From IMG/VR virus record IMGVR_UViG_3300027770_000025, positions 284,583-348,582 of that record: a DNA stretch of 64,000 nt; one strand, given 5' to 3'. Below are positions 1,563 to 57,204 of this stretch, piece by piece. The notes under the pieces were generated by a model. That model saw only the letters and a program-made list of their open reading frames with translations. It was not told where the DNA came from and searched no databases. Position 1 is the stretch's first letter, and each line of letters starts with the position of its first letter. The position numbers and the translations under genes are program-made.

Positions 1563-3434
1563 TTAATTTCCTTCCGGACCTAAAGTATCAGGTAAATCGT
1601 CAATCTGGCTATTCCATAAGCCGGTCGATAATGCTTGATCCGGGGTATCCTCGCTAAGTACGTTTCCTGCTACATCAGCAAATGCACCAAAGCTTTGTAA
1701 GTTAGCAGATGTTTTTTGAGTGCTATGATAAAGTCTTCCGTCCCCTCTATTGAATATGCTTTCAATCTCACCCCTTTCCCTGCTTCTTGCGTGTTTGAGT
1801 GTGAATGTTGCTTTCATAGTAGTTGGAAAATCATCAGGTCCTAGCGTGTCACCAAATCCAATAGTAACACCATCACATATTAAATTTCCAATCATTGCAA
1901 TAGGATTACATGGATTGCCTATAACTACATGCCATTCTCCTATTGGTGCTCCTGTTAAAAAGCTTAAAGGTGCTTGGTACTTCTCTATAAATTCACCAGT
2001 CATAGCTGTTTTCAAGAATCTAGAAGCATCGTCGCCTAAAGCATTTGTTATTTCTGCTAGTGTATCTGATATATTATTTCCTGAATTTTTACCCAATCTT
2101 GTATAGATCTCCTTTATCTTAGCAATCGATGCCTCGTCGGTTCCCCCCTGGTCTCCACCTACAGTTTCTGGTGTCTCCGATGAATCGCTACCCCCTGTGA
2201 CGTTAGCTATCTTGGATCCATAGGTAAGTAACCATCCCATAGGATCTTTATAGTATTCTTGAAGCCCCTCATCTCCACCAGGAAATCCTATGGCAGGAAA
2301 GTTGCTGTTATATCTAATATCCGGAGTTAAAAAATTACCATAATTTGTACCGATCGATAAAAGATTACCCATTAAATCCAAAAAAGCAGCTTTACTATTA
2401 ACCTCACCAACTGAGCTTAATTCATATTCAAATATTAGACTTAATCCCTCCCATGTAAAACTAAGACCTGTACCTCTGGTATATCCATCGGTAACAACAT
2501 CAACAGGGGTCCAGATATATTCCCCCATTATACCAGCTCTTTCCTTAGCAAGATCTCTTAGCCCCTTAGCTCTTATACCCTTAGATATTGTTTCATCCTC
2601 GTCAGTTGCAATCATGATTCCTTCAGAAAGAGCTGCAGTCGCATCAAAAGCATTACCCATGTCTTCAGATATTTTCTGCATAGCGCCGCCAAAAAATTTA
2701 ATTGGGCCATCCTGGAAAAATCCCTTAGAAAAAGCTTCCTGTACTAAAGTAGCTCCCTGAGAACTTGTGCTCCATACTATGCCTGTACTAAATGTAATAA
2801 GCTCGGTTAGAGCATTTCCCGTATTACCTCCAAACCAGGTAACTGCCTGTGCAACAGGTCTTCCTGCTCCCCCTGCATGATATGATTCGCTGCTTTTAAT
2901 ACTATTCTTTTCGCCAGGTACAGAAAGATTATCCAAAACTGGTGTGGGAAATCTTCTCAGGGTTATCATATAGTTATTCGGGATAGTACCATAGTATTTA
3001 CAGTACAAGAAGTCTTTCCAGTAGTAAGGTGCAGAAAGTCCGCCTATTATTGATCCCTCAACGCTACCAAGAAGACCACTTAATATTCCAGTGTTCACGT
3101 CGGCTACTGATTCGAATGTTGCAGTTTCTCTAACAAGAAAACCCGCTGTTGGATTTTTAGATTGTATTGAAGATACCCTAGTGTTATAGTCGGAAGATTC
3201 TGATCTGTAATAAGCATCAATGAAATCGTTTCCCCCGCTTCCTAGCGAATAAAAAAGATATTGCCCATATTTTCCAGGATTCCTCTTAGAAGCCTCGTAG
3301 AATAAACTCCTGGCAGTTGGACCCTTATATGGATTATTAGAACCTAGATTGCTTGCTTCCGATATAATATCATTAGCAGTACCCTGAAGCGTTGCTTCAT
3401 AGAGTAAACCAATCTTTTGCTTATCTGCTGGCAT
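1563..3434 (-). CDS. Putative baseplate/tail-tube initiator protein (gp48/gp54-like)
   Basis: C-terminal IGNLICDGVTIGFGDTLGPDDFPTTMKATFTLKH resembles tube-fold initiator C-termini; context. Confidence 0.45.
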   Translation of the reverse strand: MPADKQKIGLLYEATLQGTANDIISEASNLGSNNPYKGPTARSLFYEASKRNPGKYGQYLFYSLGSGGNDFIDAYYRSESSDYNTRVSSIQSKNPTAGFLVRETATFESVADVNTGILSGLLGSVEGSIIGGLSAPYYWKDFLYCKYYGTIPNNYMITLRRFPTPVLDNLSVPGEKNSIKSSESYHAGGAGRPVAQAVTWFGGNTGNALTELITFSTGIVWSTSSQGATLVQEAFSKGFFQDGPIKFFGGAMQKISEDMGNAFDATAALSEGIMIATDEDETISKGIRAKGLRDLAKERAGIMGEYIWTPVDVVTDGYTRGTGLSFTWEGLSLIFEYELSSVGEVNSKAAFLDLMGNLLSIGTNYGNFLTPDIRYNSNFPAIGFPGGDEGLQEYYKDPMGWLLTYGSKIANVTGGSDSSETPETVGGDQGGTDEASIAKIKEIYTRLGKNSGNNISDTLAEITNALGDDASRFLKTAMTGEFIEKYQAPLSFLTGAPIGEWHVVIGNPCNPIAMIGNLICDGVTIGFGDTLGPDDFPTTMKATFTLKHARSRERGEIESIFNRGDGRLYHSTQKTSANLQSFGAFADVAGNVLSEDTPDQALSTGLWNSQIDDLPDTLGPEGN

Positions 3435-3454
3435 TTTTAGCTATCACTATTTTT

Positions 3455-3784
3455 TTACAAATTGTGGATAGCATAATCTATTGTTTCTGGGAATTCCTCA
3501 AGAAACTCCTCCAAATTTGATTTAAAGTCAGGAGGCATGTTTCTATAGCAAACAAGTATACTATCACACTTGTTACTATATATTCCTTGAGTTATTTTAT
3601 TACGAATTGAATGATTTAGTATAAATTCTGATTCTGGATTTAGATTAATCGTCTCATACCCAAGATCCCTTATTATTTTGGTTATGTCTATAACATAGAA
3701 ATCGCAAGAAAAATTTGATCTTTTCCTTGCTTCTTTTGGAGAGTTCTTGGAGATATAAAAATTAACATTAGTTCCTTTATCCAT
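3455..3784 (-). CDS. Hypothetical protein
   Basis: ORF tightly packed in the minus-strand operon. Confidence 0.7.
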   Translation of the reverse strand: MDKGTNVNFYISKNSPKEARKRSNFSCDFYVIDITKIIRDLGYETINLNPESEFILNHSIRNKITQGIYSNKCDSILVCYRNMPPDFKSNLEEFLEEFPETIDYAIHNL

Positions 3785-3786
3785 TA

Positions 3787-4065
3787 TTAACTATTTTCTA
3801 TTTTGTCCCAATCTTTGCTTAATAGCATCGAATGAAAGCTATCATATTCGTTGGATTCGTTTCGGTAGGTAAATATTTCGTTATCTACAATGCTATTAGG
3901 TGTTTCTTTCTTCTGATTGATTATCTGTTGATTCTTCATATCCTGTAAATTTTGTCTATGAATCTCGTTTCCTGCCTCTATGCTGGAAAAATGTGAAAAT
4001 TGTTTATTTGGCTTAAGTAAACCAAACTGTCTGAGTAGCTTTCTTCTCTCTCTTCTATTTTCCAT
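3787..4065 (-). CDS. Hypothetical protein (basic N-terminus NRRERRK)
   Basis: ORF packed in operon. Confidence 0.7.
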   Translation of the reverse strand: MENRRERRKLLRQFGLLKPNKQFSHFSSIEAGNEIHRQNLQDMKNQQIINQKKETPNSIVDNEIFTYRNESNEYDSFHSMLLSKDWDKIENS

Positions 4066-4081
4066 TTATAATTTATTTATT

Positions 4082-4669
4082 TTAGATATCTACGCTAAAT
4101 CCTTTTGATTTACCAAAAGTTGAATCGTCTCTATTATAAAGATCCATGCCAACTACAAACTTAAAAAGTTTTAAAAATATTGCAGGGACAAATACGTCTT
4201 TTGCTTTAACCACGTCGTTAGCAGGAATGAAAATGAACTCTGATAATCTTTCCGATTCTGTCCCATCTGTCGTAGGAGTACCCCTTTCTATTCCAGTGAC
4301 ATCAACACCAAAGCAAGGATGCTCCGCATCCACCATTTTAGAGGCCGTTACCGTGCCTAAAAAGTGCCACTTAGTGTTATCATCAATATCAAATCCTGAC
4401 TCTTCTTTTAGCTCTCTTTTAGCTGTTTCTAGGAAGTCCGGATCTTCGTCTTCTGCGGTACCTGATATTAGGCTAATCGAATATCCACCTTCCCTAAAAG
4501 GATTTTTTTCTTTAAGAACTCCTAGCATTAAGGGTAGTCCTTGATCGTCAGTAATAAAAGGTAAAATCACTACAGATTCTACTGTTGATCTTATTCCTAT
4601 TTTACCGTCTATCTCAACAACATCGAATCTTGGGGTTGTTAAAAGTATTTTTTCCTCAGGGTTATTCAT
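4082..4669 (-). CDS. NUDIX hydrolase
   Basis: Nudix box GTAEDEDPDFLETAKRELKEESG. Confidence 0.9.
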   Translation of the reverse strand: MNNPEEKILLTTPRFDVVEIDGKIGIRSTVESVVILPFITDDQGLPLMLGVLKEKNPFREGGYSISLISGTAEDEDPDFLETAKRELKEESGFDIDDNTKWHFLGTVTASKMVDAEHPCFGVDVTGIERGTPTTDGTESERLSEFIFIPANDVVKAKDVFVPAIFLKLFKFVVGMDLYNRDDSTFGKSKGFSVDI

Positions 4670-16006: not shown

Positions 16007-17737
16007 TTATGCTAAACCACCAGCAGGTACGTTAACAAAGAATGTTAAGTACATAGTTTCTGGTAAGAAACCAGCTTCTACTAATGCGTATCTAGATTTA
16101 ACTGCGATCTTAGGTGACATTGTTCCTTCAGAGATAGTCTGAATAGACTCTGCCATCATGTAAGGCATAAATTTGATACCTGGTTCATCGTCTCCACCTT
16201 TTCTTCCAACTAATACTCTTGTATCACCGTAGCTCATGTTTTGATCAACATATACAGTCATACCAGCAAGCGAACCTACAGGGTATAAAGTACCATTGTT
16301 TTGAGTTAAAGTGTTAGAGAATGGTGCGAAAGTGAATTGAGAGATATCTTGAAGTGCACTTGCAACTGCAGCGTTTGTAACGATGAAGTTAGCAGGACCT
16401 CTTCTACCTCTGTTAGCTACCACGTTACCAGCTGCAAGAATTCTTGAGAATAATCTTCTTTGTAAAGTTGATAAGTTCTCATATCCTCCTGATGAAGGAC
16501 CTGCAGGGATTACCATTGTAGATGTAGTGTCGTCTTTCTTAACATAAGCAGATGTAGTTGAAACACTACCGTTAATAATTAAGTTTAAGTTAAGGTTTTG
16601 GCTTTCTACGTTTAAGAATTGTACGTGGTTAGACCATCCTAAAGCAAATGCTCTTGAAAGGATGTGTTTGTTGATTGCTTGAGAAACCTCATTAACCAAT
16701 GCGTTCTCGATCATTGAAATAACATCGATACCGAATTGTTTGTTAAGATCCTGAATTTGCTCAGTTGTAACTGAAGCAGCAACTTGGAAAGTTTCAGCTT
16801 CTACGAACTTAGTGAAAGTCGAAAGACCCATTGAGTTGTAGTAAGTAGATTCTCCAACACCTCTTAACATTGGGTTGTAAGTTTTAGTACCATCAACGTA
16901 AGGACCTTGGTAAGCTTGGTCGTTGTTGAAACCAGCACCAGAATAACCTTGGATGTGATCTTCTAAAGCTTTAACTAATTGTGCAGTTCCAGCTGAGTTT
17001 TGAGTGTAGAATCCTGATCCACCAGCTCCAGTAACTACTTGATAAGGAGTACCGTTGAAATAAGTAGCAACGGGAGTACCTGATGCAATACCTGTGATTT
17101 GGAAGATAGGGAAACCATCAATTCTTGATAGACCTACGAAAGTTAAAAGTAAAGTGGTGTTTATAGAAGCTGTAGCACCTACTGTGAAAGTTGTAGCATT
17201 AGCACCAGTAGCACCAGTAGCACCAGGGATACCTGAAGCAATTTGGTAAACTGGGAATTTAATCATTGAAGGAGCAGTAGCTAACTGATCAGCAGCTGAA
17301 CTAGCAGCAGCAGCACCTACTTTACCACCTGCGTATACGTAGTCTAAGTAAGACAGAATACCAGTTGGACCTGACATAGGGATAACAGGAACGATATCAA
17401 AACCTACAGTCTTCGCAGCTACCTGAATAGCTAATGGAAGTAATGAAGGGAATTTATCGCCTGAACCTTGCCAAGTGTTGTTATAAAAACCAGCGTTTGC
17501 GCCAGTTGTTAAAGCAGCAGCACCACCAAATGATGCTCCTGGGAATGCTGGAGGAGCAACAGTACCCATACCGTTTACTACGCCTAGTGAGTTGTATGCA
17601 CCAGCAGATTCATTTAATGAATGGTAATGACAATATTTAGTCAACCACCCTTTTTTGTTCTCGTCTGTGATACCAGCCTTGCTCTCAATAAGAGGTGACC
17701 AGGTTTCATAGATTTCTTGTTCGTTTATCAATTTCAT
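16007..17737 (-). CDS. gp23: Major capsid protein (T4 gp23-like)
   Basis: DIVPVIPMSGPTG, TTEQIQDL, NEVSQAINKHIL, GRRGPANFIV, PYM...PKIAVKSRYAL; true start MKLINEQ at 17737; follows the protease gene. Confidence 0.92.
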   Translation of the reverse strand: MKLINEQEIYETWSPLIESKAGITDENKKGWLTKYCHYHSLNESAGAYNSLGVVNGMGTVAPPAFPGASFGGAAALTTGANAGFYNNTWQGSGDKFPSLLPLAIQVAAKTVGFDIVPVIPMSGPTGILSYLDYVYAGGKVGAAAASSAADQLATAPSMIKFPVYQIASGIPGATGATGANATTFTVGATASINTTLLLTFVGLSRIDGFPIFQITGIASGTPVATYFNGTPYQVVTGAGGSGFYTQNSAGTAQLVKALEDHIQGYSGAGFNNDQAYQGPYVDGTKTYNPMLRGVGESTYYNSMGLSTFTKFVEAETFQVAASVTTEQIQDLNKQFGIDVISMIENALVNEVSQAINKHILSRAFALGWSNHVQFLNVESQNLNLNLIINGSVSTTSAYVKKDDTTSTMVIPAGPSSGGYENLSTLQRRLFSRILAAGNVVANRGRRGPANFIVTNAAVASALQDISQFTFAPFSNTLTQNNGTLYPVGSLAGMTVYVDQNMSYGDTRVLVGRKGGDDEPGIKFMPYMMAESIQTISEGTMSPKIAVKSRYALVEAGFLPETMYLTFFVNVPAGGLA

Positions 17738-17762
17738 GATTTTAGTTGTTTTTTTTTGTTTT

Positions 17763-19727
17763 TTATCTTTTTGGAAATTTTTGCTCAAGTGCAGAAGCAA
17801 TATAATTCATATAATCTGAAGAATATCCTTGTGGTTTTGCAGTCTCGGCTACATTTTCACTCTCGTCAAGTTTTTGTACTCCAACTGTTTTAGCTCCAAG
17901 CTGACGTGTTGACCAGAAATTTTTGATCTGATAAGGTGTATCTAAATTATAGAAGTTTGACTGAGCAACAATTGATTGCTGATGTCCTTCAGATAAAGAT
18001 TCCCATACCGGAGCATATTCTGCTGGCATTTGGTCAATAAACTTAAGACCTGTTTTAGAGGTGTCTTCTGACTCGTTAAGAGTTGTTTCGTTAGCCTTTT
18101 GTGTTTCGGCTGATGTTCTTACTGCTTTAGCAGCTTCGTTGATATTTGAAGCGGTTTTTTGTGTCTTAACCGATTCTATTAATGAATCAATCTGTGAAGT
18201 TAGGTTCTCGTAGTTTCCAGCAAAGCCAGATTCGTTAAGACCTGCTTCTGCAGATAGATTTACATTTTCTATTAATGATTGCGTAGATCCTATAGGCAAT
18301 TTGTTAGCAACTGATTCTGCAATATACTCACTGTAAGCAATACCTTTGTTTAATTTCTCCGCAATGTATTCTGAATAATCTAATCCTTTATTAACATTCT
18401 CTGCTAAATAATCAGAATACTCAATGTTTTTGTTTAGATTCTCTGCAATGTATTCAGTGTATTCGATTCCGTTGTTTAATTTTTCTGCAACGTACTCAGT
18501 GTAAGCAATACCTTTATCTAAGCTTTCGCCAAGATATTCTGAATAAGCAATACCTTTATCTACGTTTTCTGCTAGATACTCAGAATATTGAACGCTTTGA
18601 TCTAATTTTTCTGCTAGGTATTTAGAATACTCGATGTTCTTATCTACGCTCTCAGCTACATACTCTGAATAAGAAATAGATTTGTCAACATTCTCAGCTA
18701 GATATTTAGCATAAGAAATATTTTTGTCTAGATTTTCAGCTAAATATTTACTGTAGCTAATATTGCTATCTAAGTTTTCTGCAAGATATTCGCCATACTT
18801 AATAGAATCTTCTAAATTCTCAGCTAAATATTCTGCATATTTTTCAAGCTTAGCAACTCTTTCCTCAAGAGCATCATTAGCTTTACTTAAATCTTCGGAT
18901 TCGCTTAGCGATGTTTTTTGGGTTTTAGCCTCTGCGATAGCTGCTTTCATCGAATCCATTTCTTTTTTCAAGAATACTGAATACTGATTAAGCTCCTCCG
19001 CAGTAACAAATTCATTGTTCTCCATAAGGACTGATTTATTTTTATTGTCTGATTTATTCACGATTTTGTTGAATTCTTCGTTATTTTCAACTTTATATAT
19101 CTTCAGTGAAGATTCTTTTTCGATACCTAAAGATTCATTTAAGCATTCTAATGAATTTAATATGCTATTATTTTTCATTGCTTGAAAATATTGAGATGTA
19201 AACCCTTCACTCTCATATACTCTTTCAAGCTGAGCATCCTTAAATCCAGGATCTGCTACTAGATCATAGGTAAAAATTTTCTTAATCGCCACCTTCTTAT
19301 CGTTGCCAACGGATCCAGCTGCTCTTGAAGAAATAGAAAGAGGAACACCAGCATCTACTAGATTCTTAGCTATTCTACCCGCTGGGGTATCAAGAAGCTT
19401 AACCTTAATTTTAAGATCCCTATTGCTTTTGTCGTAGTTAAGATCTGTCACCATATGTGAGATATTCTTAAGTGATACGTCAAATTTCTCCGGGTGATCT
19501 AATTCTCCAACTAGTCTATTCTGAGATATCTTATCTTTTAAATAATCTAGGTGAGGTAGATATTCGCTCTCTTCGTAAATTCTATTGTTGTTGTTCTCTT
19601 TACCGAAAACAGCAGCAATACCTTCCAGAACGTAATCATCTTTATCAGACTTTTTAGCTTCTAGAACGGAATTCTGTCTTTCGAGGATGAATACCATGTT
19701 TTCGTTTATTGATTGCAGTTGTGGCAT
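17763..19727 (-). CDS. gp21: Prohead protease (gp21-like) fused to scaffold/core domain
   Basis: NNNNRIY, GELDHP, SISSRAAG, TYDLVADPGF catalytic motifs; long C-terminal 14-aa repeat coiled coil; late motif at 19755-19762. Confidence 0.9.
   Translation of the reverse strand: MPQLQSINENMVFILERQNSVLEAKKSDKDDYVLEGIAAVFGKENNNNRIYEESEYLPHLDYLKDKISQNRLVGELDHPEKFDVSLKNISHMVTDLNYDKSNRDLKIKVKLLDTPAGRIAKNLVDAGVPLSISSRAAGSVGNDKKVAIKKIFTYDLVADPGFKDAQLERVYESEGFTSQYFQAMKNNSILNSLECLNESLGIEKESSLKIYKVENNEEFNKIVNKSDNKNKSVLMENNEFVTAEELNQYSVFLKKEMDSMKAAIAEAKTQKTSLSESEDLSKANDALEERVAKLEKYAEYLAENLEDSIKYGEYLAENLDSNISYSKYLAENLDKNISYAKYLAENVDKSISYSEYVAESVDKNIEYSKYLAEKLDQSVQYSEYLAENVDKGIAYSEYLGESLDKGIAYTEYVAEKLNNGIEYTEYIAENLNKNIEYSDYLAENVNKGLDYSEYIAEKLNKGIAYSEYIAESVANKLPIGSTQSLIENVNLSAEAGLNESGFAGNYENLTSQIDSLIESVKTQKTASNINEAAKAVRTSAETQKANETTLNESEDTSKTGLKFIDQMPAEYAPVWESLSEGHQQSIVAQSNFYNLDTPYQIKNFWSTRQLGAKTVGVQKLDESENVAETAKPQGYSSDYMNYIASALEQKFPKR
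18294..18839 (-). repeat. 13 tandem 42-bp (14-aa) repeats Y-x-x-Y-[LIV]-A-E-x-[LV]-x-K-x-I-x
   Basis: Directly visible in translation (YAEYLAENLEDSIK ... YSEYIAESVANK). Confidence 0.9.
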
Positions 19728-19785
19728 GTTTTTATACTACTTTTTTATGTTTATTATATATCGACAGAAAAAATTATTTTTTTGC

Positions 19786-31465: not shown

Positions 31466-33079
31466 TTATAGAGTTACTTCCGGTGCTTCTTCTTCCGCAC
31501 CTTCAGCTGGAGCAGCTTCTCCTTCAGCGGCTTCAGCTTTAGGAGCTTCTTTTGCCTCTTTTTTCTTGTAAGATTCGTTAGCTGCTAATTGATCTGGTGT
31601 TAATCCAAGGAATCTTTGAATAAGATAATCATTATCAAAATATGCTTTTTCCTCTTCCCCTGCTTTAACCTTAAGTTCTCCTAGGCCTTTGATGAATTCA
31701 CTTCTTTTAGAAAAATTGGTTAATTGAACCATTTCTTCAAATTCACTTTCCCTATGAAAATCTAATCCAAGATTTGTTTTAAAGCTTCTATCCCTAGATA
31801 GTTCGGGAAAATCTAAACACATCTGAATGTATAAAGGTTTTACTAATATCTCTTGAAATATCGATCTTAATCTCCTTAGAAATTTCTCAAATCTTATCTC
31901 ATCTCTTTCCAATTGATCTATTCCTGTCTGATAGTTAACTGGACCAGAAGCTCTGGATGCAAACCTAGCATAAGGTATCTTTGAATCCATTTTAAGCTTG
32001 TTATAGAAATAAAGAACATTATCCATAACGTTGAAATCAGGTCCGCTTGGATTAAGTGACTCAATTTGAGGTGATTGTCCATTCTGTTCCGGGAATAGAT
32101 AGTTTTTATAAAACTGAACCTTAGGTCTTCCATTAACTGTTAATTCCCCTGATGCGTCATTAATTGAGATATCTTCCTTATAGTTTGACATTAGCTGTCC
32201 TAAAGTTTGCATCGCTTTTTGAGGTGATTGGCTTCCGGTAGGTATAATAAATTTAAGTCTATAAGAAGCATTCATAACATTCCAGATTATTCTGGAATTT
32301 TCCATGATCCTAAGAATGTTATATGATCTAACTAATCTCTCGATATAGCTAACCCTAGATACGCTGTTTCCTTTAGCATAAGAGATATAGACAATCTGCT
32401 CGTTTGTAAGCTTCCGAGTCATTTGCGGATTCTTGGGATACTGAATCCAAAATTGCTGATATTCATTCTCACCAATTTTTTCAACCGCTGGCTGAAGTGA
32501 AGAAGCATCCAATTCTTTGAATCCTATTATCTCCTTACCCTTATTATCATAGATAATCTCGAAAGCAAGAAATCCATCTATTAGGAATTGTTTAAAATAC
32601 TGCCATCCTAGTATAGAATTCTGAAATCCAAAAACGTTATAAATCCTGTTATAGTGATCGGCTATTTTATCCTTTACCTTTTCCTTAATATCTAGATTAA
32701 CGAAAGAAGGATTAGCAAAATAATTTCTATCGTCGTATGTGATAGATTCGTCTGTAATAGTATCAAGTATAAATTCAATTTCTCCATTTAGTGAAAATTT
32801 TCTTAAAAAGTTTCTTTTTTCTATATAATCCTTATCGAAATAAGCAATATATTTTCTTACCTTGGTATCCTGATAGGAAGCTGTCCAATAGAAAGCATCA
32901 TCCTGGGTAAATCCAGTCCCCTGCTGAGAGAAAGCTCCTTCTGTTTTACCTATGGCCTGAGAGTTTCTAACGACCATATCATCATACTGCATACCAAACT
33001 TGGAAACCTTTCCTAGGTTCCTTATTATGTTGCCTAGAGCTGACTCGTTAGGTCTTAAAAAATCTAAAAATCCTGCCAT
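31466..33079 (-). CDS. gp20: Portal protein (gp20-like), paralog 2
   Basis: FLIDG, SYIERLVRSYNILRIMENSRIIW, KIPYARF, RDEIRFEKFLRRLRSIF. Confidence 0.88.
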   Translation of the reverse strand: MAGFLDFLRPNESALGNIIRNLGKVSKFGMQYDDMVVRNSQAIGKTEGAFSQQGTGFTQDDAFYWTASYQDTKVRKYIAYFDKDYIEKRNFLRKFSLNGEIEFILDTITDESITYDDRNYFANPSFVNLDIKEKVKDKIADHYNRIYNVFGFQNSILGWQYFKQFLIDGFLAFEIIYDNKGKEIIGFKELDASSLQPAVEKIGENEYQQFWIQYPKNPQMTRKLTNEQIVYISYAKGNSVSRVSYIERLVRSYNILRIMENSRIIWNVMNASYRLKFIIPTGSQSPQKAMQTLGQLMSNYKEDISINDASGELTVNGRPKVQFYKNYLFPEQNGQSPQIESLNPSGPDFNVMDNVLYFYNKLKMDSKIPYARFASRASGPVNYQTGIDQLERDEIRFEKFLRRLRSIFQEILVKPLYIQMCLDFPELSRDRSFKTNLGLDFHRESEFEEMVQLTNFSKRSEFIKGLGELKVKAGEEEKAYFDNDYLIQRFLGLTPDQLAANESYKKKEAKEAPKAEAAEGEAAPAEGAEEEAPEVTL

Positions 33080-33088
33080 TTCTTATTT

Positions 33089-34699
33089 TTATAATGTTAC
33101 TTGGGTTGATTTTTCTTCTCCCTCTTCACCATTCTCTCCGCCTTCTTTATCCTCTGACTTTTTCTTTTCCTTCGCTTTTCTATCCATAACCTCTCTATTT
33201 GCAATGATATCTTGTCTAGACATACCAAGGAATGTTTCGATAAGAAATGCAGTAGAGAAATAAGGCTTTTCCTCATCACCAACTAATCCGGACATAGCAG
33301 TAACAGATTCTTTTCTTTTGTTGATCACGTCCATTTCCTGATTAATCTTAAATGGATTATCAGAAAAGTAGTCAAGTCCCATTTGACTTTTAAACATGAA
33401 ATCTTTTTCTAAATGTGTATATTTCTTAGCCATCTGAATCCAGAGTGGTTTGACTAATATCTCTTGGAATACAGATCTTAATCTTTCGATAAATTTGGCA
33501 AACCTTATCTCCTCCTTGTCCAATCCTTCTGCACCGTTAGAGTAGGGAGAAGTATTACCCCCGTCGGGTGTATGAAATCTAGAGGGTGGAACTTTCGATT
33601 CCTGGACAAACTTATCAAAGAAATATGATAAAGGTGCGGGATCATTAAGATTTGGTCCTTCTGTATTAACTGGCTCGATAGTAGGTGTACCGTTAACCCC
33701 AGAAGGCATCAGATAGTTCTTATAGAACTGTATCTTAGGTTTACCGTCTACCAGTAATTCTCCGCTATCATCATTTAGCTGAATGTCTTCCTTATAAATA
33801 CTCATAAGTTCTCCTAAAGTCTGCATACCTTTTTGAGGAGATTTAGTACCAATGGGAACTGTCATCTTTAGTCTGAATGAAGAATTCATTACTGACCATA
33901 TAATTCTGGTATATTCTATAATCCTTAGAATATTATAGGGCCTAATTAATCTCTCGATGTAACTTACTCTAGATATAGAGTTTCCCTTAGCGTATGAAAT
34001 GTAAATTATTTGTGGATCGTAAAGTACTCTTCTCCTTTTTGGGTCCTGAGGAAATTGTGTCCAGGTATTAATAAAGGTACCGTCTATTTGTTTTTCAACC
34101 GATGGTACAATAGTAACCGAATCTAATTCTTTGAATCCTACGATATATTTACCGTCATCATCATATATGATCTCAAAGCATAAAAATCCATCAACTAAAA
34201 ACTGTCTGAAGTATTGCCATCCTGTTATATCATCACTGAATCCCCATATATCATAAAGCTTCTTGTAATTCTCATATAACTCATCTTTAAGTTTCTCATT
34301 GATATTAGTTATATCGATAAAATCAGGGTATGCAAAAAAGTTAGCTGGATCATAAGATATAGCCTCATCGCATATAGTATCTAGTACCCATTCTATTTCG
34401 GGATTAAGCGAGAATTTTCTTAAATAATCTCTTTTACCCTTATAATCTTTATCGAAATATGAAATGAATTGTCTTGTAGTAATATCCTGCTTCGCTAATG
34501 TCCAAAGCATGCTTTCATCTTCTACATTAGCCTTATTCTTGTTTAAGAATGCAGCTTCAGTTACACCAACTGCTTGTGAATTTCTGATGACCATGTCATC
34601 ATATTTCATACCAAAAGTGCTTAGCTTTCTCACCGATTCCCTAATCCTCTGTATAACAGGAGATTGGGATGGATCATTATTATCTACAAAACCGGCCAT
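33089..34699 (-). CDS. gp20: Portal protein (gp20-like), paralog 1
   Basis: FLVDG, SYIERLIRPYNILRIIEYTRIIW, KVPPSRF, KEEIRFAKFIERLRSVF. Confidence 0.88.
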   Translation of the reverse strand: MAGFVDNNDPSQSPVIQRIRESVRKLSTFGMKYDDMVIRNSQAVGVTEAAFLNKNKANVEDESMLWTLAKQDITTRQFISYFDKDYKGKRDYLRKFSLNPEIEWVLDTICDEAISYDPANFFAYPDFIDITNINEKLKDELYENYKKLYDIWGFSDDITGWQYFRQFLVDGFLCFEIIYDDDGKYIVGFKELDSVTIVPSVEKQIDGTFINTWTQFPQDPKRRRVLYDPQIIYISYAKGNSISRVSYIERLIRPYNILRIIEYTRIIWSVMNSSFRLKMTVPIGTKSPQKGMQTLGELMSIYKEDIQLNDDSGELLVDGKPKIQFYKNYLMPSGVNGTPTIEPVNTEGPNLNDPAPLSYFFDKFVQESKVPPSRFHTPDGGNTSPYSNGAEGLDKEEIRFAKFIERLRSVFQEILVKPLWIQMAKKYTHLEKDFMFKSQMGLDYFSDNPFKINQEMDVINKRKESVTAMSGLVGDEEKPYFSTAFLIETFLGMSRQDIIANREVMDRKAKEKKKSEDKEGGENGEEGEEKSTQVTL

Positions 34700-34732: not shown

Positions 34733-35338
34733 TCAAATTAATTTCGATTGGTATTCCTTATATATCCCTGCTATATCTAAGCCCTCTACTTGAGATTTTC
34801 TAAGATATGGTATTTTATACCAGTCATCTAGATCTAAAATGCTGATCTCCCTTATGAATGTTGTCTTAAATCCGAAGACTGAATACTCATATCCCGTACC
34901 CAAAAGAATTTTTTTAAGATTTATATTTGTTAAAGGCAGTGGGGTTATTGCTCCACCTTTTGTGTAATGATTTTGGTTTTTCTCTATGATGCTAGTAAAG
35001 TTATCATAGATCTTACCCAATATTTTCACTCTATATTCGGGAGGGGTTACTATTAAATCTATACCAGAGAGTATAATCCCATTTTCTTTTGTCTGGTAAG
35101 AATCAGTACATAGCACTATGGGATTTCTGTCTATAAACTTTCTTTTCTCTGTTACCTCGCTGTCTGTAGGATAGGGAAAGGAGTATATCTCGCCAGGGAT
35201 AAACGGGGGTGAGAATTTCTTCTCCGATTTCCCGCCTTGGAAATACTTTTCTGTAAATATATCATCGGTATTCCTTACAAGATCTGCAATACTGGGAAAT
35301 TCTTTTTTATATTCTAATACTAATTCTGAATAGGTCAT
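34733..35338 (-). CDS. gp2: DNA end protector (T4 gp2-like)
   Basis: PGEIYSFPY...DRNPIVL...GIDLIVTPP pattern; adjacent to gp4 as in T4-like phages. Confidence 0.6.
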   Translation of the reverse strand: MTYSELVLEYKKEFPSIADLVRNTDDIFTEKYFQGGKSEKKFSPPFIPGEIYSFPYPTDSEVTEKRKFIDRNPIVLCTDSYQTKENGIILSGIDLIVTPPEYRVKILGKIYDNFTSIIEKNQNHYTKGGAITPLPLTNINLKKILLGTGYEYSVFGFKTTFIREISILDLDDWYKIPYLRKSQVEGLDIAGIYKEYQSKLI

Positions 35339-35820
35339 CTACTTTTAAATAGAAATTTTTCATCGACCACACCGAATCTAAACCCTCTTTTTTCTGCCCA
35401 TTCCTTTGCTGCTTTGAATTTTGCCTGATTTGTTATCCATACCTGCATACTGTGATTATATGACTTTAACTTAGCAAGAGTCATAGCTCCTTCGTAGATG
35501 GGCTTTTGTGTTTGTCTTTCTGGTTTTATTTCGATAATCCACTCTTGCTCTTCTTCAGATTCTTTGAGTACCTTTATATAGAAATCCACATTATAATCAT
35601 GTTCTTTCTTATCCAGTGGATTGAAATACTTAATTGCTATAGGTTCGGAACTCCATTTTAATATAGAATCATTTGTATCGCAATAAACACAAAAACGATA
35701 TTCCCAGGAAGACCTGTATATTATATTATGGATGTCACCAATATACTTTTCTGGCTTAGATGGTTCAAATTTTCCAGATTTATAATCACCATTAGGCTTT
35801 ACCTTCTTTATATCGGTCAT
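35335..35820 (-). CDS. gp4: Head completion nuclease (gp4/TnsA-like)
   Basis: PEKYIGD...YRSSWE...WSSE...VDFY...EIKP...NQAKFKAA. Confidence 0.9.
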   Translation of the reverse strand: MTDIKKVKPNGDYKSGKFEPSKPEKYIGDIHNIIYRSSWEYRFCVYCDTNDSILKWSSEPIAIKYFNPLDKKEHDYNVDFYIKVLKESEEEQEWIIEIKPERQTQKPIYEGAMTLAKLKSYNHSMQVWITNQAKFKAAKEWAEKRGFRFGVVDEKFLFKSR

Positions 35821-35831
35821 TCGAATTAAGA

Positions 35832-36191
35832 TTAAACGTTATAAGTGTTATCATCACCAGTTATATAACTGAATGGTATCATCTTAGGACTTTTCGGAGG
35901 ATGCAGTTTCTTCCATCCTTTTGCAAATCCATTCTTAGCTATTTGAGTAAAATAAGCAAATGGATTGTTAGATTTTTCCGGATTGAATCTGTCCCAATAT
36001 TTACAAAGATCCTCCATAGCAAATGCCATGCAATCCTCTTTGTCTTCCGGATCCTTATAAGCCATTTTTTTAGATATACCTTGTATCATAAGGTTAAACA
36101 TTCTTATGGTCTCGGGGGTAAGTTTACCCAATTTTTTTGATTCTATAACAGCGACAATAAGTTCACTATTTCTAACATATTCTTTTGCCAT
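35832..36191 (-). CDS. gp55: Late-transcription sigma factor (gp55-like, short)
   Basis: YVRNSEL, FNPEKSNNPFAYFTQI. Confidence 0.8.
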   Translation of the reverse strand: MAKEYVRNSELIVAVIESKKLGKLTPETIRMFNLMIQGISKKMAYKDPEDKEDCMAFAMEDLCKYWDRFNPEKSNNPFAYFTQIAKNGFAKGWKKLHPPKSPKMIPFSYITGDDNTYNV

Positions 36192-36254
36192 TAATTTTTT
36201 ATATTTTTTAAGGTTGGTATTACTCTTTCTAGTAGAAAAAAGGTAAATTATTTC

Positions 36255-36286
36255 AAAAAAAAGAACGTAGCCTATTGTCTACGTTC
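36255..36286 (-). terminator. Intrinsic terminator
   Basis: Minus strand GAACGTAG-ACAATAGG-CTACGTTC-TTTTTTT. Confidence 0.8.
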
Positions 36287-36303
36287 CCTGATTGTTTTTA
36301 ATA

Positions 36304-36462
36304 CTATTTGGAGTCTTCTTTTGTATCTTCTTCCTCTTCTTGTTCTTCTTGTTCTTTCCCTGTTGGGGCTTTACTTAATTTTCCTGCGGAAGAATCTACG
36401 AATTTTTTTCCCGGTGCGTTCTGATTTTCTGCCTTAGGAGCAAAATAGAAGTTGCGGCTTAG
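36304..36462 (-). CDS. -1 frame extension (52 aa) of the 766-aa protein
   Basis: LSRNFYFAPKAENQNAPGKKFVDSSAGKLSKAPTGKEQEEQEEEEDTKEDSK*, with no start codon, opening at the TTA AAA AAA AAC TAA slippery site. Confidence 0.6.
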   Translation of the reverse strand, partial: LSRNFYFAPKAENQNAPGKKFVDSSAGKLSKAPTGKEQEEQEEEEDTKEDSK

Positions 36463-38759
36463 TTTTTTTTTAAATCGTCTGCTTCGTCTAGGTTGTATCC
36501 AATTTCGTCATTTACTTCGAAATCGATATCACCTTCTGTTCCAGGAGCTTCAGCTAGATTCATAAATTTATCCAGAGAAGTTAAGTGTTTTTTTTCTTTC
36601 GTAGATTTTCCAGATTCGTTTACTGTTAGGTTGTAACCGTGCATATGATCTAATTTCATTCCGATCTCGTCGTCTTCGCCTTTAGGTGCTTTAGTAAATC
36701 CGTGTCCGTCTGCAAATGTTTTCAATAAAGCTTTTTGTTCTTCCTCGCTTAATGCAGATTTATTTAGATTTCTTGAAATCTCATCTGATTCTTTAACTTC
36801 ACCGCCTTCTTCTTCACCTTTAGAATCGTCATTTTTTTCTGCTGCTTGACTTAAAGCCTCTTCTAAATCAGAAATCTCGTTAACTAAAAAGTCTGAAGTT
36901 TTACCAGTATCTAAAAGAATAGTGAATCTACCCGAAGATCCATCTACGGATATGATCTTCCCCGTTTCTCCTGATTCTTTAACCTTGATGTAATCCCCAA
37001 TGTTGAATTTCTCATCTTCAGATAGGGTTTCGATCTCAGGAGTGATTTCAGCTTTATCTAATTCAATATTGATTTGATTCCATTTTTCTCTTAGTACTGA
37101 AAGTTCGCTATTAAGTAAAGAATGTGCGGTCTTCATTTCTTTTGAAGCAGCATATAATGGATTGTTTTCCATTAAGCTCTCAATTTTATTGATTTGATCT
37201 TCCACACTAGAAATATTTTCTAATACTTTAGTTCTGTCATTAATCATAATAGACTTAAGTTTTTGCTCTCCGTCTAAGAATTCTGTTAATCCTTCAGCGA
37301 TATCATATCTTAAGTAATCCTTAACCATTTTAACTGCCTGAGATCCATTTACTTTGTAAATTGAATTCTCTCTCATTCCCTCGTTAATTCTCTGAAGATA
37401 AATCTCGTTATTCCATTTAATAAGGTTGATTGCTACTCCTTCGTAAATATTGGAAGTTATATTTTTAGCAAAATCTAATTCAACGATATTAGAGAAGTTT
37501 ACATAAAGATTAAGGATATCATTAACTACCTGAGATTCATTAACAGCAAAGTGAGATGCTGATTCTAATCCTAATACTTTACCTAATTCTCCAACGCTTC
37601 TAAAGTTTAATTTTGATTTACCTAGGTAAACAGATACACTTTCATTTTCTTCTACTAAGCTAACATATTTCTTACCTAATTGAATTAGGATACCATTTTC
37701 GTTAATTCTAACATAAGATCTAACCGATGCGTTTACCAATCCGATATAATCAGATGGAACTGAACCAATTTCTTTTGTACTTAATTTTCTAAAAGATTCA
37801 CCTTGAGCTTCAAATAAGCTGTTACCTATTGCAAAGATAGTCTTATCCCCTTCAATTAAGATCGGTGAGTAAATTCTGCCTACTTTTGATTCACCTTGAG
37901 CATTAACAGGGATTTCTAATTTTCTAGTATCAGCTGCTTCATTAACATTTAAGTAATTGATTAAATTTCTAACAACCGGATTGAAAGACCATTTAGTAAT
38001 TTCTTTAGATAATAAACCAGAAGATTTACCTTCTGAAATTAACCAGTTGTTTAATGACTCGCTAAGCTCAGAATAAAAGCTATTATTTCCACTTTGCTTA
38101 ATAGATTCTAAAACTTTAGAAACCTCTATCTCTCTAGCGAATTTAGTAGATTTCTCTTTTAATCCCTCAATCAAAGGTAAAACTGTAACGTCCCATTTGA
38201 ATGATTCTAATTCAGCAATAAAGTTATCAATTACTGCAAATTCAGGTACGTTTTTATTTACGATGATATTTGCATATTGTTCACAAACAATTTTAACTTT
38301 AGGGTATTCGTATATAGAAAGACCTCTTAGATCGTTAATTGATTCTAAAACTCCTAGATTTTTTAATCCCTGAGCATCAACAAAAGATTTAGCGCTATCA
38401 TCATTCGAAGCTAAATTATTTAAGCTTTCTAATAATGAATTGCTAGTATCCTCTTTCTTTTCGTTATCTAAATATGAACCAGCATTATTTAAAGATGGAT
38501 TAGCTTTTAGTCCTCCCCATGATTCCATTAAAGATGATGCTGCTTTTTTAGAAGCCCCCATCTGTTCGCTCTTTATTGATTCCCAGTGATTTTTTAATTC
38601 TGGTGTTGCTTCTATATCTGAAGCTTGCTCGTTAAGAGCAGCAAGAACTTGGCTTTCGCTCATTTCAGATGATCCGTTAAGATAGCTTTCGCATATCTGT
38701 CTAACCTCTGGCGATTTTGTTAGTTCTTTTAGTTTTTTAACTTGGTTTATAAAATCCAT
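36459..38759 (-). CDS. Large acidic late protein, putative prohead core/head protein
   Basis: Late motif at 38784-38791; many [LIV]xE sites; KOW-like FNIGDYIKVKESGETGKII; C-terminal AP repeats. Confidence 0.55.
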   Translation of the reverse strand: MDFINQVKKLKELTKSPEVRQICESYLNGSSEMSESQVLAALNEQASDIEATPELKNHWESIKSEQMGASKKAASSLMESWGGLKANPSLNNAGSYLDNEKKEDTSNSLLESLNNLASNDDSAKSFVDAQGLKNLGVLESINDLRGLSIYEYPKVKIVCEQYANIIVNKNVPEFAVIDNFIAELESFKWDVTVLPLIEGLKEKSTKFAREIEVSKVLESIKQSGNNSFYSELSESLNNWLISEGKSSGLLSKEITKWSFNPVVRNLINYLNVNEAADTRKLEIPVNAQGESKVGRIYSPILIEGDKTIFAIGNSLFEAQGESFRKLSTKEIGSVPSDYIGLVNASVRSYVRINENGILIQLGKKYVSLVEENESVSVYLGKSKLNFRSVGELGKVLGLESASHFAVNESQVVNDILNLYVNFSNIVELDFAKNITSNIYEGVAINLIKWNNEIYLQRINEGMRENSIYKVNGSQAVKMVKDYLRYDIAEGLTEFLDGEQKLKSIMINDRTKVLENISSVEDQINKIESLMENNPLYAASKEMKTAHSLLNSELSVLREKWNQINIELDKAEITPEIETLSEDEKFNIGDYIKVKESGETGKIISVDGSSGRFTILLDTGKTSDFLVNEISDLEEALSQAAEKNDDSKGEEEGGEVKESDEISRNLNKSALSEEEQKALLKTFADGHGFTKAPKGEDDEIGMKLDHMHGYNLTVNESGKSTKEKKHLTSLDKFMNLAEAPGTEGDIDFEVNDEIGYNLDEADDLKKN

Positions 38760-38843
38760 GGTCTTTTGTTTTTTTAATCTTTTTATATATCCACGTTATG
38801 GATAGAAACTTTTTACTATATATTTAAACTGTGTCGAATTTTA

Positions 38844-42963: not shown

Positions 42964-43596
42964 TTAATGTTTCCCCTCCATCTTTTTTTTGATCCTACCC
43001 CTTGCTCTTCTTATTCGAGTAGCGATAGATCTTTTCTTAATGCCATACTTTTCTGCTATGTCCTTGTATTTCATACCATTAATCTCTCTGTCAATCATAA
43101 TATCTCTATAGGTATCAGGTAAAGATCTTATTTCATCTAAAACGGACTCATAAACAGAGTCAATGGTATTTTCCTCGCTAAAGAATCCATATGCTGGATC
43201 ATCCTCAATAGTATAAAATCCACCTATTTCTCCTATTGTGTTTTTAGAAGAAAGGTACTCTAAATCACCATCCTCATGAGCTATTAATCTCTTTCTAGAT
43301 TTCAGAAGTAATAGCGATTCATTTCTTGCTATGTTATAACACCATGTGGAAAAATTACCTCTCTCCATATCATATTGATCTATCTTTAGCCATATCTTGG
43401 ACATGGTATTAAGAAAAGAATCCTCTGCTAATTCCATATTTTTTAGAATCAAAAAACAATGGTTGGATACACCAGGTTTAAGTCTGTTAAATAAATCACT
43501 GAATGACTTGTCTGTTTTATTTAGAATGAAATCCTCTGCTAATGTCTGAATGTTTGTCTCTTTAATCTCCTTTACTTCTCTGTGTTCTTTTTGCAT
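42964..43596 (-). CDS. ECF-type sigma-70 factor
   Basis: Region 2 AEDSFLNT...FSTWCYNIARN; region 4 LPDTYRDIM...GMKYKDIAEKYG...SIATRIRRAR. Confidence 0.9.
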   Translation of the reverse strand: MQKEHREVKEIKETNIQTLAEDFILNKTDKSFSDLFNRLKPGVSNHCFLILKNMELAEDSFLNTMSKIWLKIDQYDMERGNFSTWCYNIARNESLLLLKSRKRLIAHEDGDLEYLSSKNTIGEIGGFYTIEDDPAYGFFSEENTIDSVYESVLDEIRSLPDTYRDIMIDREINGMKYKDIAEKYGIKKRSIATRIRRARGRIKKKMEGKH

Positions 43597-51964: not shown

Positions 51965-52036
51965 TATTTTTAAGATATTTTTTGCTTCTTTACTATATAT
52001 CGAAATAGAAAGTAGAATATTAGATCAATTGAATCT

Positions 52037-57152: not shown

Positions 57153-57204
57153 TATTTAGTGGATATCTTTTCTTTATATATCCACTTAAATAAATAAGAG
57201 AAGC

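What the first reader, a model, noticed from the sequence alone, without database searches (positions are those of the whole stretch)
36304..36475. Candidate programmed -1 frameshift extending the 766-aa late protein
The ORF ends GAT TTA AAA AAA AAC TAA, containing the canonical slippery heptamer A_AAA_AAC within an A9 run. The -1 frame continues 52 codons with no start of its own. It repeats the parent's AP motif (FAPKAE, NAPG, LSKAPTG vs FTKAPKGE, LAEAPGTE) and ends in an acidic tail just before the terminator. This would give two isoforms by ribosomal frameshift or transcriptional slippage.
Basis: partly seen in the sequence, partly recalled or inferred. Interest (0 to 1): 0.65.

Follow-up and report, generated by a model that had tools for sequence, protein, structure and literature searches.

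The report
Conserved A9 recoding site, phage gene
A gene of a 349-kb T4-like freshwater phage ends at a run of nine A's, and a 52-codon tail in the -1 frame is conserved with it in dozens of related phages, so the gene almost certainly makes a short and a long protein by programmed slippage, a known trick in a new gene family of unknown function.

Summary
The 766-aa ORF (36459-38759) ends TTA AAA AAA AAC TAA, with the A9 run at 36463-36471. The -1 frame runs 52 codons without a start codon to a TAG at 36304-36306, followed directly by a terminator.

Comparative evidence makes it a real recoding site:
- About 110 of 121 homologue clusters end KKN or KKK.
- All 34 distinct DNA loci keep a run of 9 A's (10 in two).
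- The tail is under purifying selection only in the -1 frame (pN/pS 0.25, against 1.6-1.8 in the other frames).
- One derived clade has the tail fused in frame yet keeps A9, with a stop 1-4 codons into its -1 frame.
- In the 349-kb genome this is the only A9/T9 run inside a coding sequence; 57 KKK tripeptides are never all-AAA (16 expected).

No conserved RNA stimulator was found. Because the run length is kept in two codon phases, and the usual heptamer A_AAA_AAC shifts poorly on E. coli ribosomes, I favour RNA polymerase slippage (about 0.5) over ribosomal -1 frameshifting (about 0.35). Read data could not settle this. The protein's function is unknown. This is a new member of a known kind.

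The parts
38784..38791 (-). GATATATA promoter-like motif, about 22 nt upstream of the ATG
   Evidence: All 14 copies in the window lie on the coding strand (7.6 expected over both strands). They sit upstream of the sheath, portal, prohead protease and head-closure genes as well as this gene. That it is a late promoter is an inference.
36459..38759 (-). Zero-frame ORF, 766 aa (short isoform), including the stop TAA at 36459-36461
   Evidence: There are 295 homologues, all 'hypothetical'. The AF2 model gives a helical N-terminal part, a beta domain at 283-486, a coiled-coil hairpin at 491-571, an SH3-like domain at 590-625 and a disordered region at 634-766.
36463..36471 (-). A9 run (T9 on the + strand), the slippage site
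   Evidence: It is kept at 9 A's (10 in two) in 34 distinct related loci across four arrangements. It is the only A9/T9 run inside a coding sequence in the 348,582-bp genome.
36462..36468 (-). Heptamer A_AAA_AAC in the zero frame (candidate ribosomal -1 slip site)
   Evidence: The last base is C in most relatives, G in some and A in one, and never T.
36307..36462 (-). -1 frame extension, 52 codons, giving an 818-aa long isoform
   Evidence: pN/pS is 0.25 in this frame against 1.56 and 1.79 in the other two. All 36 third positions vary, against 22 first and 17 second positions. It holds two more A-P motifs and an acidic end.
36304..36306 (-). Stop codon TAG of the -1 frame
36252..36289 (-). Intrinsic terminator (11-pair hairpin plus T run), placed after the tail and not after the zero-frame stop
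   Evidence: A similar hairpin plus T run follows the tail in the relatives printed.

Best explanation
The gene makes two proteins from one promoter-to-terminator unit. Faithful expression gives a 766-aa protein ending ...DLKKN. A set fraction of expression events shifts to the -1 frame at the A9 run and adds 52 residues, giving 818 aa. The addition holds two more copies of the C-terminal 'hydrophobic-x-x-A-P-G/K' motif and a strongly acidic end.

The shift is most likely made by the host RNA polymerase. On a run of nine A's that fills the 9-10 bp RNA:DNA hybrid, the transcript can realign and gain one extra A. A10 mRNAs are then translated normally into the long form, with junction ...LKKK-LSRNFYF.

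Shown: the run, the frame relation, the coding status of the tail and their conservation. Inferred: that slippage occurs, its efficiency, that the polymerase rather than the ribosome slips, and what the extension does. My guess for its role is that it changes the number of binding motifs and the charge of a disordered C-terminal arm of a late, probably virion-associated protein.
For: Recoding as such:
- 34 distinct related loci keep the A run and the tail, and about 110 of 121 protein clusters end KKN or KKK.
- The tail is under purifying selection only in the -1 frame.
- There is no start codon for the tail.
- The tail is fused in frame in one derived clade, which proves that body and tail are one polypeptide.
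- The terminator sits after the tail.
- Independent DNA assemblies read A9.

Polymerase slippage in particular:
- The run length of 9-10 is invariant, although only 6 A's plus one base are needed for a ribosomal heptamer.
- The three synonymous positions inside the run never vary, while all 36 third positions of the tail do.
- The run is kept in two codon phases (xxA AAA AAA AAN and GAA AAA AAA ACC) and in the in-frame clade.
- Coding sequences of this genome avoid A9. None of 57 KKK tripeptides is all-AAA against 16.3 expected, and counts of A-runs of exactly 7, 8 and 9 are 135, 25 and 1.
- No conserved RNA stimulator and almost no Shine-Dalgarno use.
- The review PMC5009743 states that bacterial RNA polymerase slips with high efficiency in vivo on runs of 9 A or T, that Thermus dnaX uses this, and that A_AAA_AAC is much less shift-prone than A_AAA_AAG in E. 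coli.
Against: - No direct RNA evidence exists. Only assembled contigs were on hand. The one RNA-library contig that bridges the site (X15, a related strain) reads A9 with no indel. This caps slipped transcripts below a majority but cannot show or exclude a minority, and the contig may derive from DNA.
- Every arrangement also contains a valid ribosomal heptamer (A_AAA_AAC, A_AAA_AAG or A_AAA_AAA), and in most relatives a stop codon follows it directly, which can favour ribosomal slipping.
- Ribosomes also slide on long A runs, so dependence on run length is not unique to the polymerase.
- No protein data show the long isoform.
Confidence: 0.5

Rival explanations
1. The same two isoforms are made by the ribosome. 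This would be a tandem -1 slip at A_AAA_AAC (P site AAA, A site AAC), helped by the stop codon that follows, or ribosome sliding on the lysine-coding A run. The mRNA stays A9, and the junction of a tandem slip would read ...LKKN-LSRNFYF.
For: - A canonical X_XXY_YYZ heptamer in the zero frame is present in all arrangements.
- In some relatives it is A_AAA_AAG, the most shift-prone bacterial site.
- A zero-frame stop directly after the heptamer is kept in most relatives.
- AAA AAA AAG is under-represented in this genome's genes, 4 against 8.4 expected.
- The RNA-library contig reads A9.
- The phage carries its own tRNA-Lys(UUU).
Against: - No conserved downstream structure at any spacing. RNAalifold finds none, and the one candidate hairpin starts 16 nt away and shows no covariation.
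- No Shine-Dalgarno-type stimulator is likely, since only 7% of genes have such a motif.
- The commonest site, A_AAA_AAC, shifts poorly on E. coli ribosomes.
- A simple heptamer model does not explain why the three extra A's upstream of the heptamer never vary.
- The immediate stop is dispensable in L028/L045.
Confidence: 0.36
2. DNA-level phase variation. Replication slippage toggles the run between A9 and A10 in the phage population, so some genomes encode the long form directly.
For: Homopolymer runs are hot spots for replication slippage. Relatives exist with the tail in frame, and two have A10.
Against: - In the in-frame relatives the run is still A9. The frame difference comes from changes outside the run.
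- Both A10 relatives (L035, L058) still need a -1 shift.
- About 45 loci from many metagenomes and an independent DNA run show no length variant restoring the frame.
Confidence: 0.04
3. Artefact or decay. Either the true sequence is A10 and a homopolymer error split one ORF, or the tail is a dead remnant after a frameshift mutation.
For: A single-base change in an A9 run is the commonest assembly or mutation error. A few relatives do have one continuous ORF.
Against: - The same A9 appears in an identical contig from another metagenome, in a DNA run of another study, and in dozens of relatives down to 52% protein identity.
- The tail's -1-frame pN/pS is 0.25 with saturated synonymous change, which a dead remnant would not show.
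- The tree places the -1 arrangement as the widespread state.
Confidence: 0.03
4. The tail is a separate small gene, translated on its own or by termination-reinitiation.
For: It lies between a stop codon and a terminator and is conserved.
Against: - There is no ATG, GTG or TTG in its frame from the upstream -1-frame stop, 5-15 codons before the run, through the start of the tail.
- Its first codon varies among CTA, GTA and ATA.
- It is covalently part of the protein in the in-frame clade.
- It repeats the parent's own C-terminal motif.
Confidence: 0.02

Closest known systems
dnaX tau/gamma (E. coli: -1 frameshift at A_AAA_AAG; Thermus thermophilus: RNA polymerase slippage on a run of 9; some bacteria with the reversed arrangement)
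   Same: - Two isoforms share an N-terminal body and differ in a C-terminal part.
- The site is a lysine-coding A run.
- Related genes use either 'long form in one ORF, short form by slippage into nearby stops' or 'short form by default with the stop right after the site, long form by shift' (PMC5009743). Both arrangements occur in this family.
   Different: - The protein is unrelated, with no clamp-loader or AAA+ signature.
- It is a phage gene.
- No downstream hairpin or upstream Shine-Dalgarno stimulator is present, unlike E. coli dnaX.
- The added part is a short disordered tail, not folded domains.
IS-element transposase fusion (IS1 A_AAA_AAC -1 frameshift; IS elements that use polymerase slippage on A/T runs)
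   Same: The heptamer is the same as in IS1 (my own knowledge). Ribosomal and transcriptional routes are both used within that one class of genes (PMC5009743).
   Different: It is not a mobile element. The downstream frame holds a 52-aa tail, not a catalytic domain. The site lies at the very end of the ORF.
Phage C-terminal extension by -1 frameshift: T7 capsid 10A/10B and lambda gpG/gpGT tail assembly chaperone
   Same: A tailed-phage late gene gives a major short and a minor C-terminally extended form in a fixed ratio (lambda G/GT in PMC5009743; T7 10A/10B from my own knowledge).
   Different: - It is not a capsid protein and not a chaperone upstream of a tape measure. The neighbours are a gp55-type late sigma gene and small unknown genes.
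- The site is a 9-base homopolymer.
- The polymerase-slippage cases in virus genomes that the 2016 review's table caption covers are RNA viruses.
Shigella type III secretion genes spa13, spa33, mxiA (my own knowledge adds mxiE): transcriptional slippage on A/T runs
   Same: Bacterial RNA polymerase slippage gives a C-terminally extended functional protein in a fixed fraction, 25-30% for spa13 (PMC5009743).
   Different: These are host pathogen genes, not phage genes, and the proteins are unrelated.

Membership tests
Programmed -1 ribosomal frameshift cassette | Slippery heptamer X_XXY_YYZ in the zero frame | tested here: met
   A_AAA_AAC at 36462-36468(-). Relatives have A_AAA_AAC, A_AAA_AAG or A_AAA_AAA.
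Programmed -1 ribosomal frameshift cassette | Conserved stimulatory RNA structure 5-9 nt downstream, or a Shine-Dalgarno-like element upstream | tested here: not met
   - RNAalifold finds no consensus structure from -30 to +85 in 27 sequences.
- The candidate hairpin starts 16 nt downstream, and its pairing equals shuffled and slid controls.
- No conserved upstream G-rich element.
- SD-like motifs occur in only 7% of genes.
- Stimulators are common but not obligatory for this class.
Programmed -1 ribosomal frameshift cassette | Conserved, selected ORF in the -1 frame without its own start | tested here: met
   (pN/pS 0.25 against more than 1.5 in the other frames).
Programmed -1 ribosomal frameshift cassette | Trans-frame protein made from unaltered mRNA | not testable with these tools
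   This needs proteomics plus RNA sequencing. Only assembled contigs were on hand.
Programmed transcriptional slippage (bacterial RNA polymerase) | Homopolymeric A or T run of about 9 or more, matching the RNA:DNA hybrid | tested here: met
   A9 at 36463-36471. The run is 9 or 10 in all 34 distinct related loci. The threshold is taken from PMC5009743.
Programmed transcriptional slippage (bacterial RNA polymerase) | Run length conserved as such, independent of codon phase and of amino-acid need | tested here: met
   The run is kept in two codon phases and in the in-frame clade. The codon before it is TTA, GTA, TCA, GGA or GAA, always ending in A. The Lys codons are never AAG, although AAG makes up 34% of Lys codons in this genome.
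Programmed transcriptional slippage (bacterial RNA polymerase) | Heterogeneous mRNA (A9 plus A10...) from homogeneous DNA | tested here: inconclusive
   The DNA contig (X5) and the RNA-library contig (X15) both read A9. Contigs drop minority variants and no raw reads were available.
Programmed transcriptional slippage (bacterial RNA polymerase) | Such runs are selected against elsewhere in coding sequence of the same genome | tested here: met
   One of 10 A9/T9 runs lies in a coding sequence, and it is this one. None of 57 KKK tripeptides is all-AAA against 16.3 expected.
T4-like (Straboviridae-type) phage, genome context | T4 core genes: gp20 portal, gp55 late sigma, gp4, gp2, sheath, large terminase, gp44-type clamp loader, prohead protease, major head protein | tested here: met
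   PHROG and Pfam hits. The record is a 348,582-bp IMG/VR virus genome.
Phage tail assembly chaperone G/GT | Small chaperone gene directly upstream of the tape-measure gene, with a -1 shift near its end | tested here: not met
   This is a 766-aa multidomain protein with a gp55-type gene downstream and no chaperone or tape-measure family hit.

The most novel reading that the evidence does not exclude
This is a programmed transcriptional slippage site in a late gene of a tailed dsDNA phage, read by the host RNA polymerase under phage late-transcription control. The default isoform has flipped within the family: it is short by default in most phages and long by default in one clade, while the A9 run stays fixed. 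That would make it a phage counterpart of the dnaX story. [quoted passage not shown] The extension would tune the number of A-P binding motifs on a disordered arm of a protein that in some phages carries a peptidoglycan-binding domain.
Probability: 0.45. Interest if true: 0.7.

Novelty: new member of a known kind. Interest (0 to 1): 0.6.

Why it matters
- Annotation. Gene callers truncate this protein in nearly every member of a large family of freshwater jumbo phages, so a conserved 50-56-aa C-terminal module is missing from the databases.
- Recoding. It offers a natural comparative series for separating polymerase slippage from ribosomal slippage: four arrangements around one invariant A9 run, including a flip of the default isoform. 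The likely host group makes little use of Shine-Dalgarno pairing.
- Phage biology. It points to a dosed long isoform of a conserved late protein of unknown function, always encoded next to the late sigma factor gene. That gives a concrete handle (A9 interrupted, or tail fused) for finding out what the protein does.

Tried and rejected
- Downstream stimulatory hairpin. Single-sequence folds suggested a 7-pair hairpin 16 nt after the run. RNAalifold found no consensus structure, and pair counts equal shuffled and slid controls. Rejected.
- Upstream hairpin next to the run (GAATC...GATTT). It is present in some relatives only and is weak. Not conserved.
- T4 late-promoter consensus TATAAATA. It is not enriched, with 12 found against 13.5 expected. 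GATATATA fits better.
- Protein identity.
  - Pfam gave only a sub-threshold SH3-like MSSS hit.
  - PHROGs gave nothing.
  - A PDB profile search gave nothing.
  - Foldseek against PDB gave nothing at E <= 0.001. The weak RqcH, arylamine acetyltransferase and sliding-clamp rows have TM about 0.1-0.2.
  - VIA-align matched only generic coiled-coil hairpins for the whole model and reached Z <= 6.7, within noise, for the beta domain.
  - The ESM Atlas by shape gave weak rows and by features gave nothing.
  - BFVD gave clear but uncharacterised relatives in Tenacibaculum phages PTm1 and pT24 and in uncultured phages.
  - A literature search on PTm1 gave no functional lead that I followed.
- Reads. 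All 22 runs are kept as assembled contigs. The laid contigs confirm A9 in DNA and in one RNA library but cannot show minority transcripts.
- Megablast against isolated phages found nothing. tblastn found one distant uncultured phage whose homologue ends after the SH3-like domain, without repeats or tail.
- A search of the phage's other ORFs for the same A-P motif array or the NFYF motif gave nothing convincing.
- The first tree script was lost and was rerun with FastTree.
- The large representative-protein search, the complex prediction and the metagenome and genome collection scans were not used. The claim does not rest on absence of relatives.
Full report
**What is in the sequence**

The feature lies on the minus strand. 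The ORF 36459-38759(-) encodes 766 aa and ends GAT TTA AAA AAA AAC TAA. Coordinates of the parts:
- A9 run: 36463-36471.
- Zero-frame heptamer A_AAA_AAC: 36462-36468.
- Stop TAA: 36459-36461.
- -1 frame extension: 52 codons, 36462 down to 36307.
- Stop of the -1 frame: TAG at 36304-36306.

The -1 frame contains no ATG, GTG or TTG start. An 11-pair hairpin followed by a T run (36289-36260, minus strand) comes 15 nt after that TAG. So the terminator closes the unit after the tail, not after the zero-frame stop.

**Context**

The window is the last 64 kb of a 348,582-bp IMG/VR virus record judged complete. Family scans identify a T4-like phage. The hits are:
- two gp20-type portal genes;
- gp2 and gp4;
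- a gp55-type late sigma gene directly downstream of our gene;
- DNA ligase and a gp44-type clamp loader;
- prohead protease and major head protein;
- large terminase and tail sheath.

Only 7% of genes have a Shine-Dalgarno-like motif, and their leaders are A-rich. The clearest structural relatives of the protein are uncharacterised proteins of Tenacibaculum phages. The runs that hold the sequence are freshwater metagenomes. A Bacteroidota host is my inference from these three points.

The motif GATATATA occurs 14 times in the window, always on the coding strand. It sits upstream of the sheath, portal, protease and head-closure genes, and 22 nt upstream of this gene's ATG. The T4 consensus TATAAATA is not enriched. 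'Late gene' is therefore plausible but inferred.

**Comparative test**

The search for related loci returned 52 loci at 52-100% protein identity from many metagenomes. In every locus that reaches the gene's end, the run of A's and a conserved peptide downstream of it are present. The peptide has the form xSRNFYFAPK..QNxPG..F[VI]xSSxGKLSKAPxGK followed by an acidic end. Of 121 protein clusters from the word search, about 110 end KKN or KKK.

Over the first 36 tail codons in 30 distinct sequences:
- pN/pS is 0.25 in the -1 frame, with pS at 0.68.
- pN/pS is 1.56 and 1.79 in the other two frames.
- All 36 third positions vary, against 22 first and 17 second positions.

The tail is therefore translated in the -1 frame. 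Upstream of the run, the -1 frame is closed by a stop 5-15 codons back with no start codon between, so it cannot be a separate gene.

**The arrangements**

- (a) Most relatives have xxA AAA AAA AAN plus TAA or TAG, with the tail in -1. N is C, G or A.
- (b) L028/L045 read GAA AAA AAA ACC. The run sits in another codon phase, the zero frame runs on for 15 more codons, and the tail is still in -1.
- (c) L037/38/40/49, L054 and L056 read TCA or GGA AAA AAA AAC CCN. The tail is fused in frame, A9 is kept, and the -1 frame stops after 1-4 codons, giving KKKP* or KKKPQS*.
- (d) L058 and L035 have A10 with the tail still in -1.

A FastTree of 34 distinct proteins puts (b), (c) and L058 in one clade (support 100). 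That clade is nested among -1/A9 sequences and is sister to L024/L029. This suggests that '-1 plus A9 plus stop' is the ancestral state and that the in-frame form is derived. The root is only a midpoint root, so the polarity remains an inference.

The fused clade proves that body and tail form one protein. Its retained A9 and early -1 stop suggest that it still makes both forms, with the default reversed. The review PMC5009743 describes the same duality for dnaX.

**Is A9 special in this genome?**

The genome has ten A9/T9 runs. Nine lie in leaders or between genes, and only this one lies inside a coding sequence. Among ORFs of at least 100 aa:
- AAA makes up 66% of Lys codons.
- None of 57 KKK tripeptides is written AAAAAAAAA, against 16.3 expected.
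- Counts of A-runs of exactly 6, 7, 8 and 9 fall 322, 135, 25, 1.

The phage avoids such runs in genes but has kept this one across deep divergence.

**Not an error**

An identical contig from another metagenome (L033) reads A9, and so do all the relatives that reach the gene's end apart from the two A10 loci. A DNA run of another study (X5) covers 36200-38176 without any gap.

An RNA-library contig of a close strain (X15) bridges the site, also with A9 and no indel. So slipped transcripts are not the majority. Contigs cannot show a minority, and the contig might come from DNA. No raw reads were on offer.

**Mechanism**

No conserved RNA structure exists from -30 to +85. A hairpin seen in single folds has no covariation support. 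Four observations favour RNA polymerase slippage adding one A:
- The run length is fixed at 9-10, although a ribosomal heptamer needs only six A's plus one base.
- The three synonymous positions within the run are invariant.
- The run is kept in two codon phases.
- A_AAA_AAC is a poor shifter on E. coli ribosomes, while bacterial RNA polymerase slips efficiently on runs of 9 (PMC5009743).

Against this, every arrangement also offers a valid heptamer, a stop usually follows it, and ribosomes can slide on A runs. My estimates are about 0.9 that this is programmed recoding. Within that, I put about 0.5 on the polymerase and about 0.36 on the ribosome, and both may contribute.

**The protein**

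The AF2 model of the whole protein has pLDDT 67. It shows:
- a helical N-terminal part with a disordered loop at 81-129;
- a beta-rich domain at 283-486, which reaches pLDDT 88 when folded alone;
- a long coiled-coil hairpin at 491-571;
- an SH3-like domain at 590-625, matching Pfam MSSS below threshold but in 29 of 41 members;
- a disordered C-terminal region.

No solved structure matches above noise.

In four of the 41 scanned members, a PG_binding_1 domain is present (best E = 2e-26). In the three I mapped it sits in the loop after residue 102. That hints that the protein meets the cell wall.

The C-terminal region carries 1-8 copies of hydrophobic-x-x-A-P-[G/K/E], and the copy number varies among relatives. 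The tail adds two more copies plus an acidic end.

A distant homologue in a 462-kb uncultured phage ends after the SH3-like domain, with no repeats or tail, and is also followed by the gp55-type gene. So the repeat arm and its recoded extension are an addition within this subfamily. The function remains unknown. My working guess is a late, possibly virion-associated protein whose disordered arm binds a partner through the A-P motifs, with slippage setting the share of molecules that carry the longer, more acidic arm.

**Verdict**

This is a well-conserved recoding site of a known kind in a new, unannotated gene family. It has an unusually informative set of natural variants. If the polymerase is responsible, it would be a polymerase-slippage case in a dsDNA phage, whereas the cases covered by the caption of the 2016 review's table are RNA viruses.

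Noticed in passing
window 31466-33079(-) and 33089-34699(-): Two tandem gp20-type portal genes, 537 and 536 aa, 51% identical to each other. Both give full-length Portal_T4 matches. Two portal paralogues in one phage is unusual.
   Followed up: partly
window, 14 sites, e.g. 38784-38791, 34759-34766, 51994-52001, 57175-57182, 19755-19762 (all minus strand): GATATATA occurs 14 times, all on the coding strand (7.6 expected over both strands). Most copies are just upstream of genes, including the sheath, portal, prohead protease and head-closure genes. It is a candidate late promoter that differs from the T4 TATAAATA, which is not enriched.
   Followed up: partly
window 17749-17757 (T9 on +, A9 on the minus strand): A second A9 run lies just after the stop of the prohead protease gene (17763-19727) and within the open frame leading into the major head protein gene (16007-17800, TTG start as listed). 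It is probably in the leader, and the true start is likely downstream, but this was not checked in relatives.
   Followed up: partly
whole genome G000 (outside and inside the window): Coding sequences avoid long A runs. None of 57 KKK tripeptides is all-AAA (16.3 expected), AAA AAA AAG occurs 4 times against 8.4 expected, and nine of ten A9/T9 runs lie in leaders or spacers.
   Followed up: yes
G000:C1 45775-55609, 120689-120766, 182451-182522 (outside the window): Seven tRNA genes were found: His, Cys, Arg x2, Met, Lys(UUU), and one that ARAGORN calls with a two-base anticodon loop oddity. The phage's own tRNA-Lys(UUU) reads the codon of the slippery run.
   Followed up: no
homologues P0109, P0113, P0115, P0121 (loci L054-L057, L037): A PG_binding_1 domain (two in P0121, judged by the insert length) is inserted in the disordered loop that corresponds to residues about 81-129 of the window's protein. 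This is mostly the clade whose tail is fused in frame (P0121 itself ends before the tail).
   Followed up: partly
L059 (LR756500.1) 2200-4095 and downstream: A distant homologue (26% identity over the beta domain) in a 462-kb uncultured phage is also followed directly by a gp55-type late sigma gene. The pairing of this protein with gp55 is therefore old.
   Followed up: partly
whole genome; window gene starts: Only 7% of genes have a Shine-Dalgarno-like 4-mer. Leaders are A-rich and G-poor, as in Bacteroidota hosts.
   Followed up: partly
window 35335-35820(-): The gp4-type head-closure protein also matches the TnsA-like endonuclease N-terminal domain (PF08722, E = 1.5e-19).
   Followed up: no
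window 36254 and 36286 (terminator region): The RNA-library contig of a related strain (X15) differs by one inserted and one deleted base around the terminator after the tail, at its T run and at the 5' base of its stem. It has no indel at the A9 run.
   Followed up: no
window 42964-43596(-): A second sigma-factor-like gene (phrog_1740, E = 1e-23) lies a few genes upstream, in addition to the gp55-type gene at 35832-36191.
   Followed up: no
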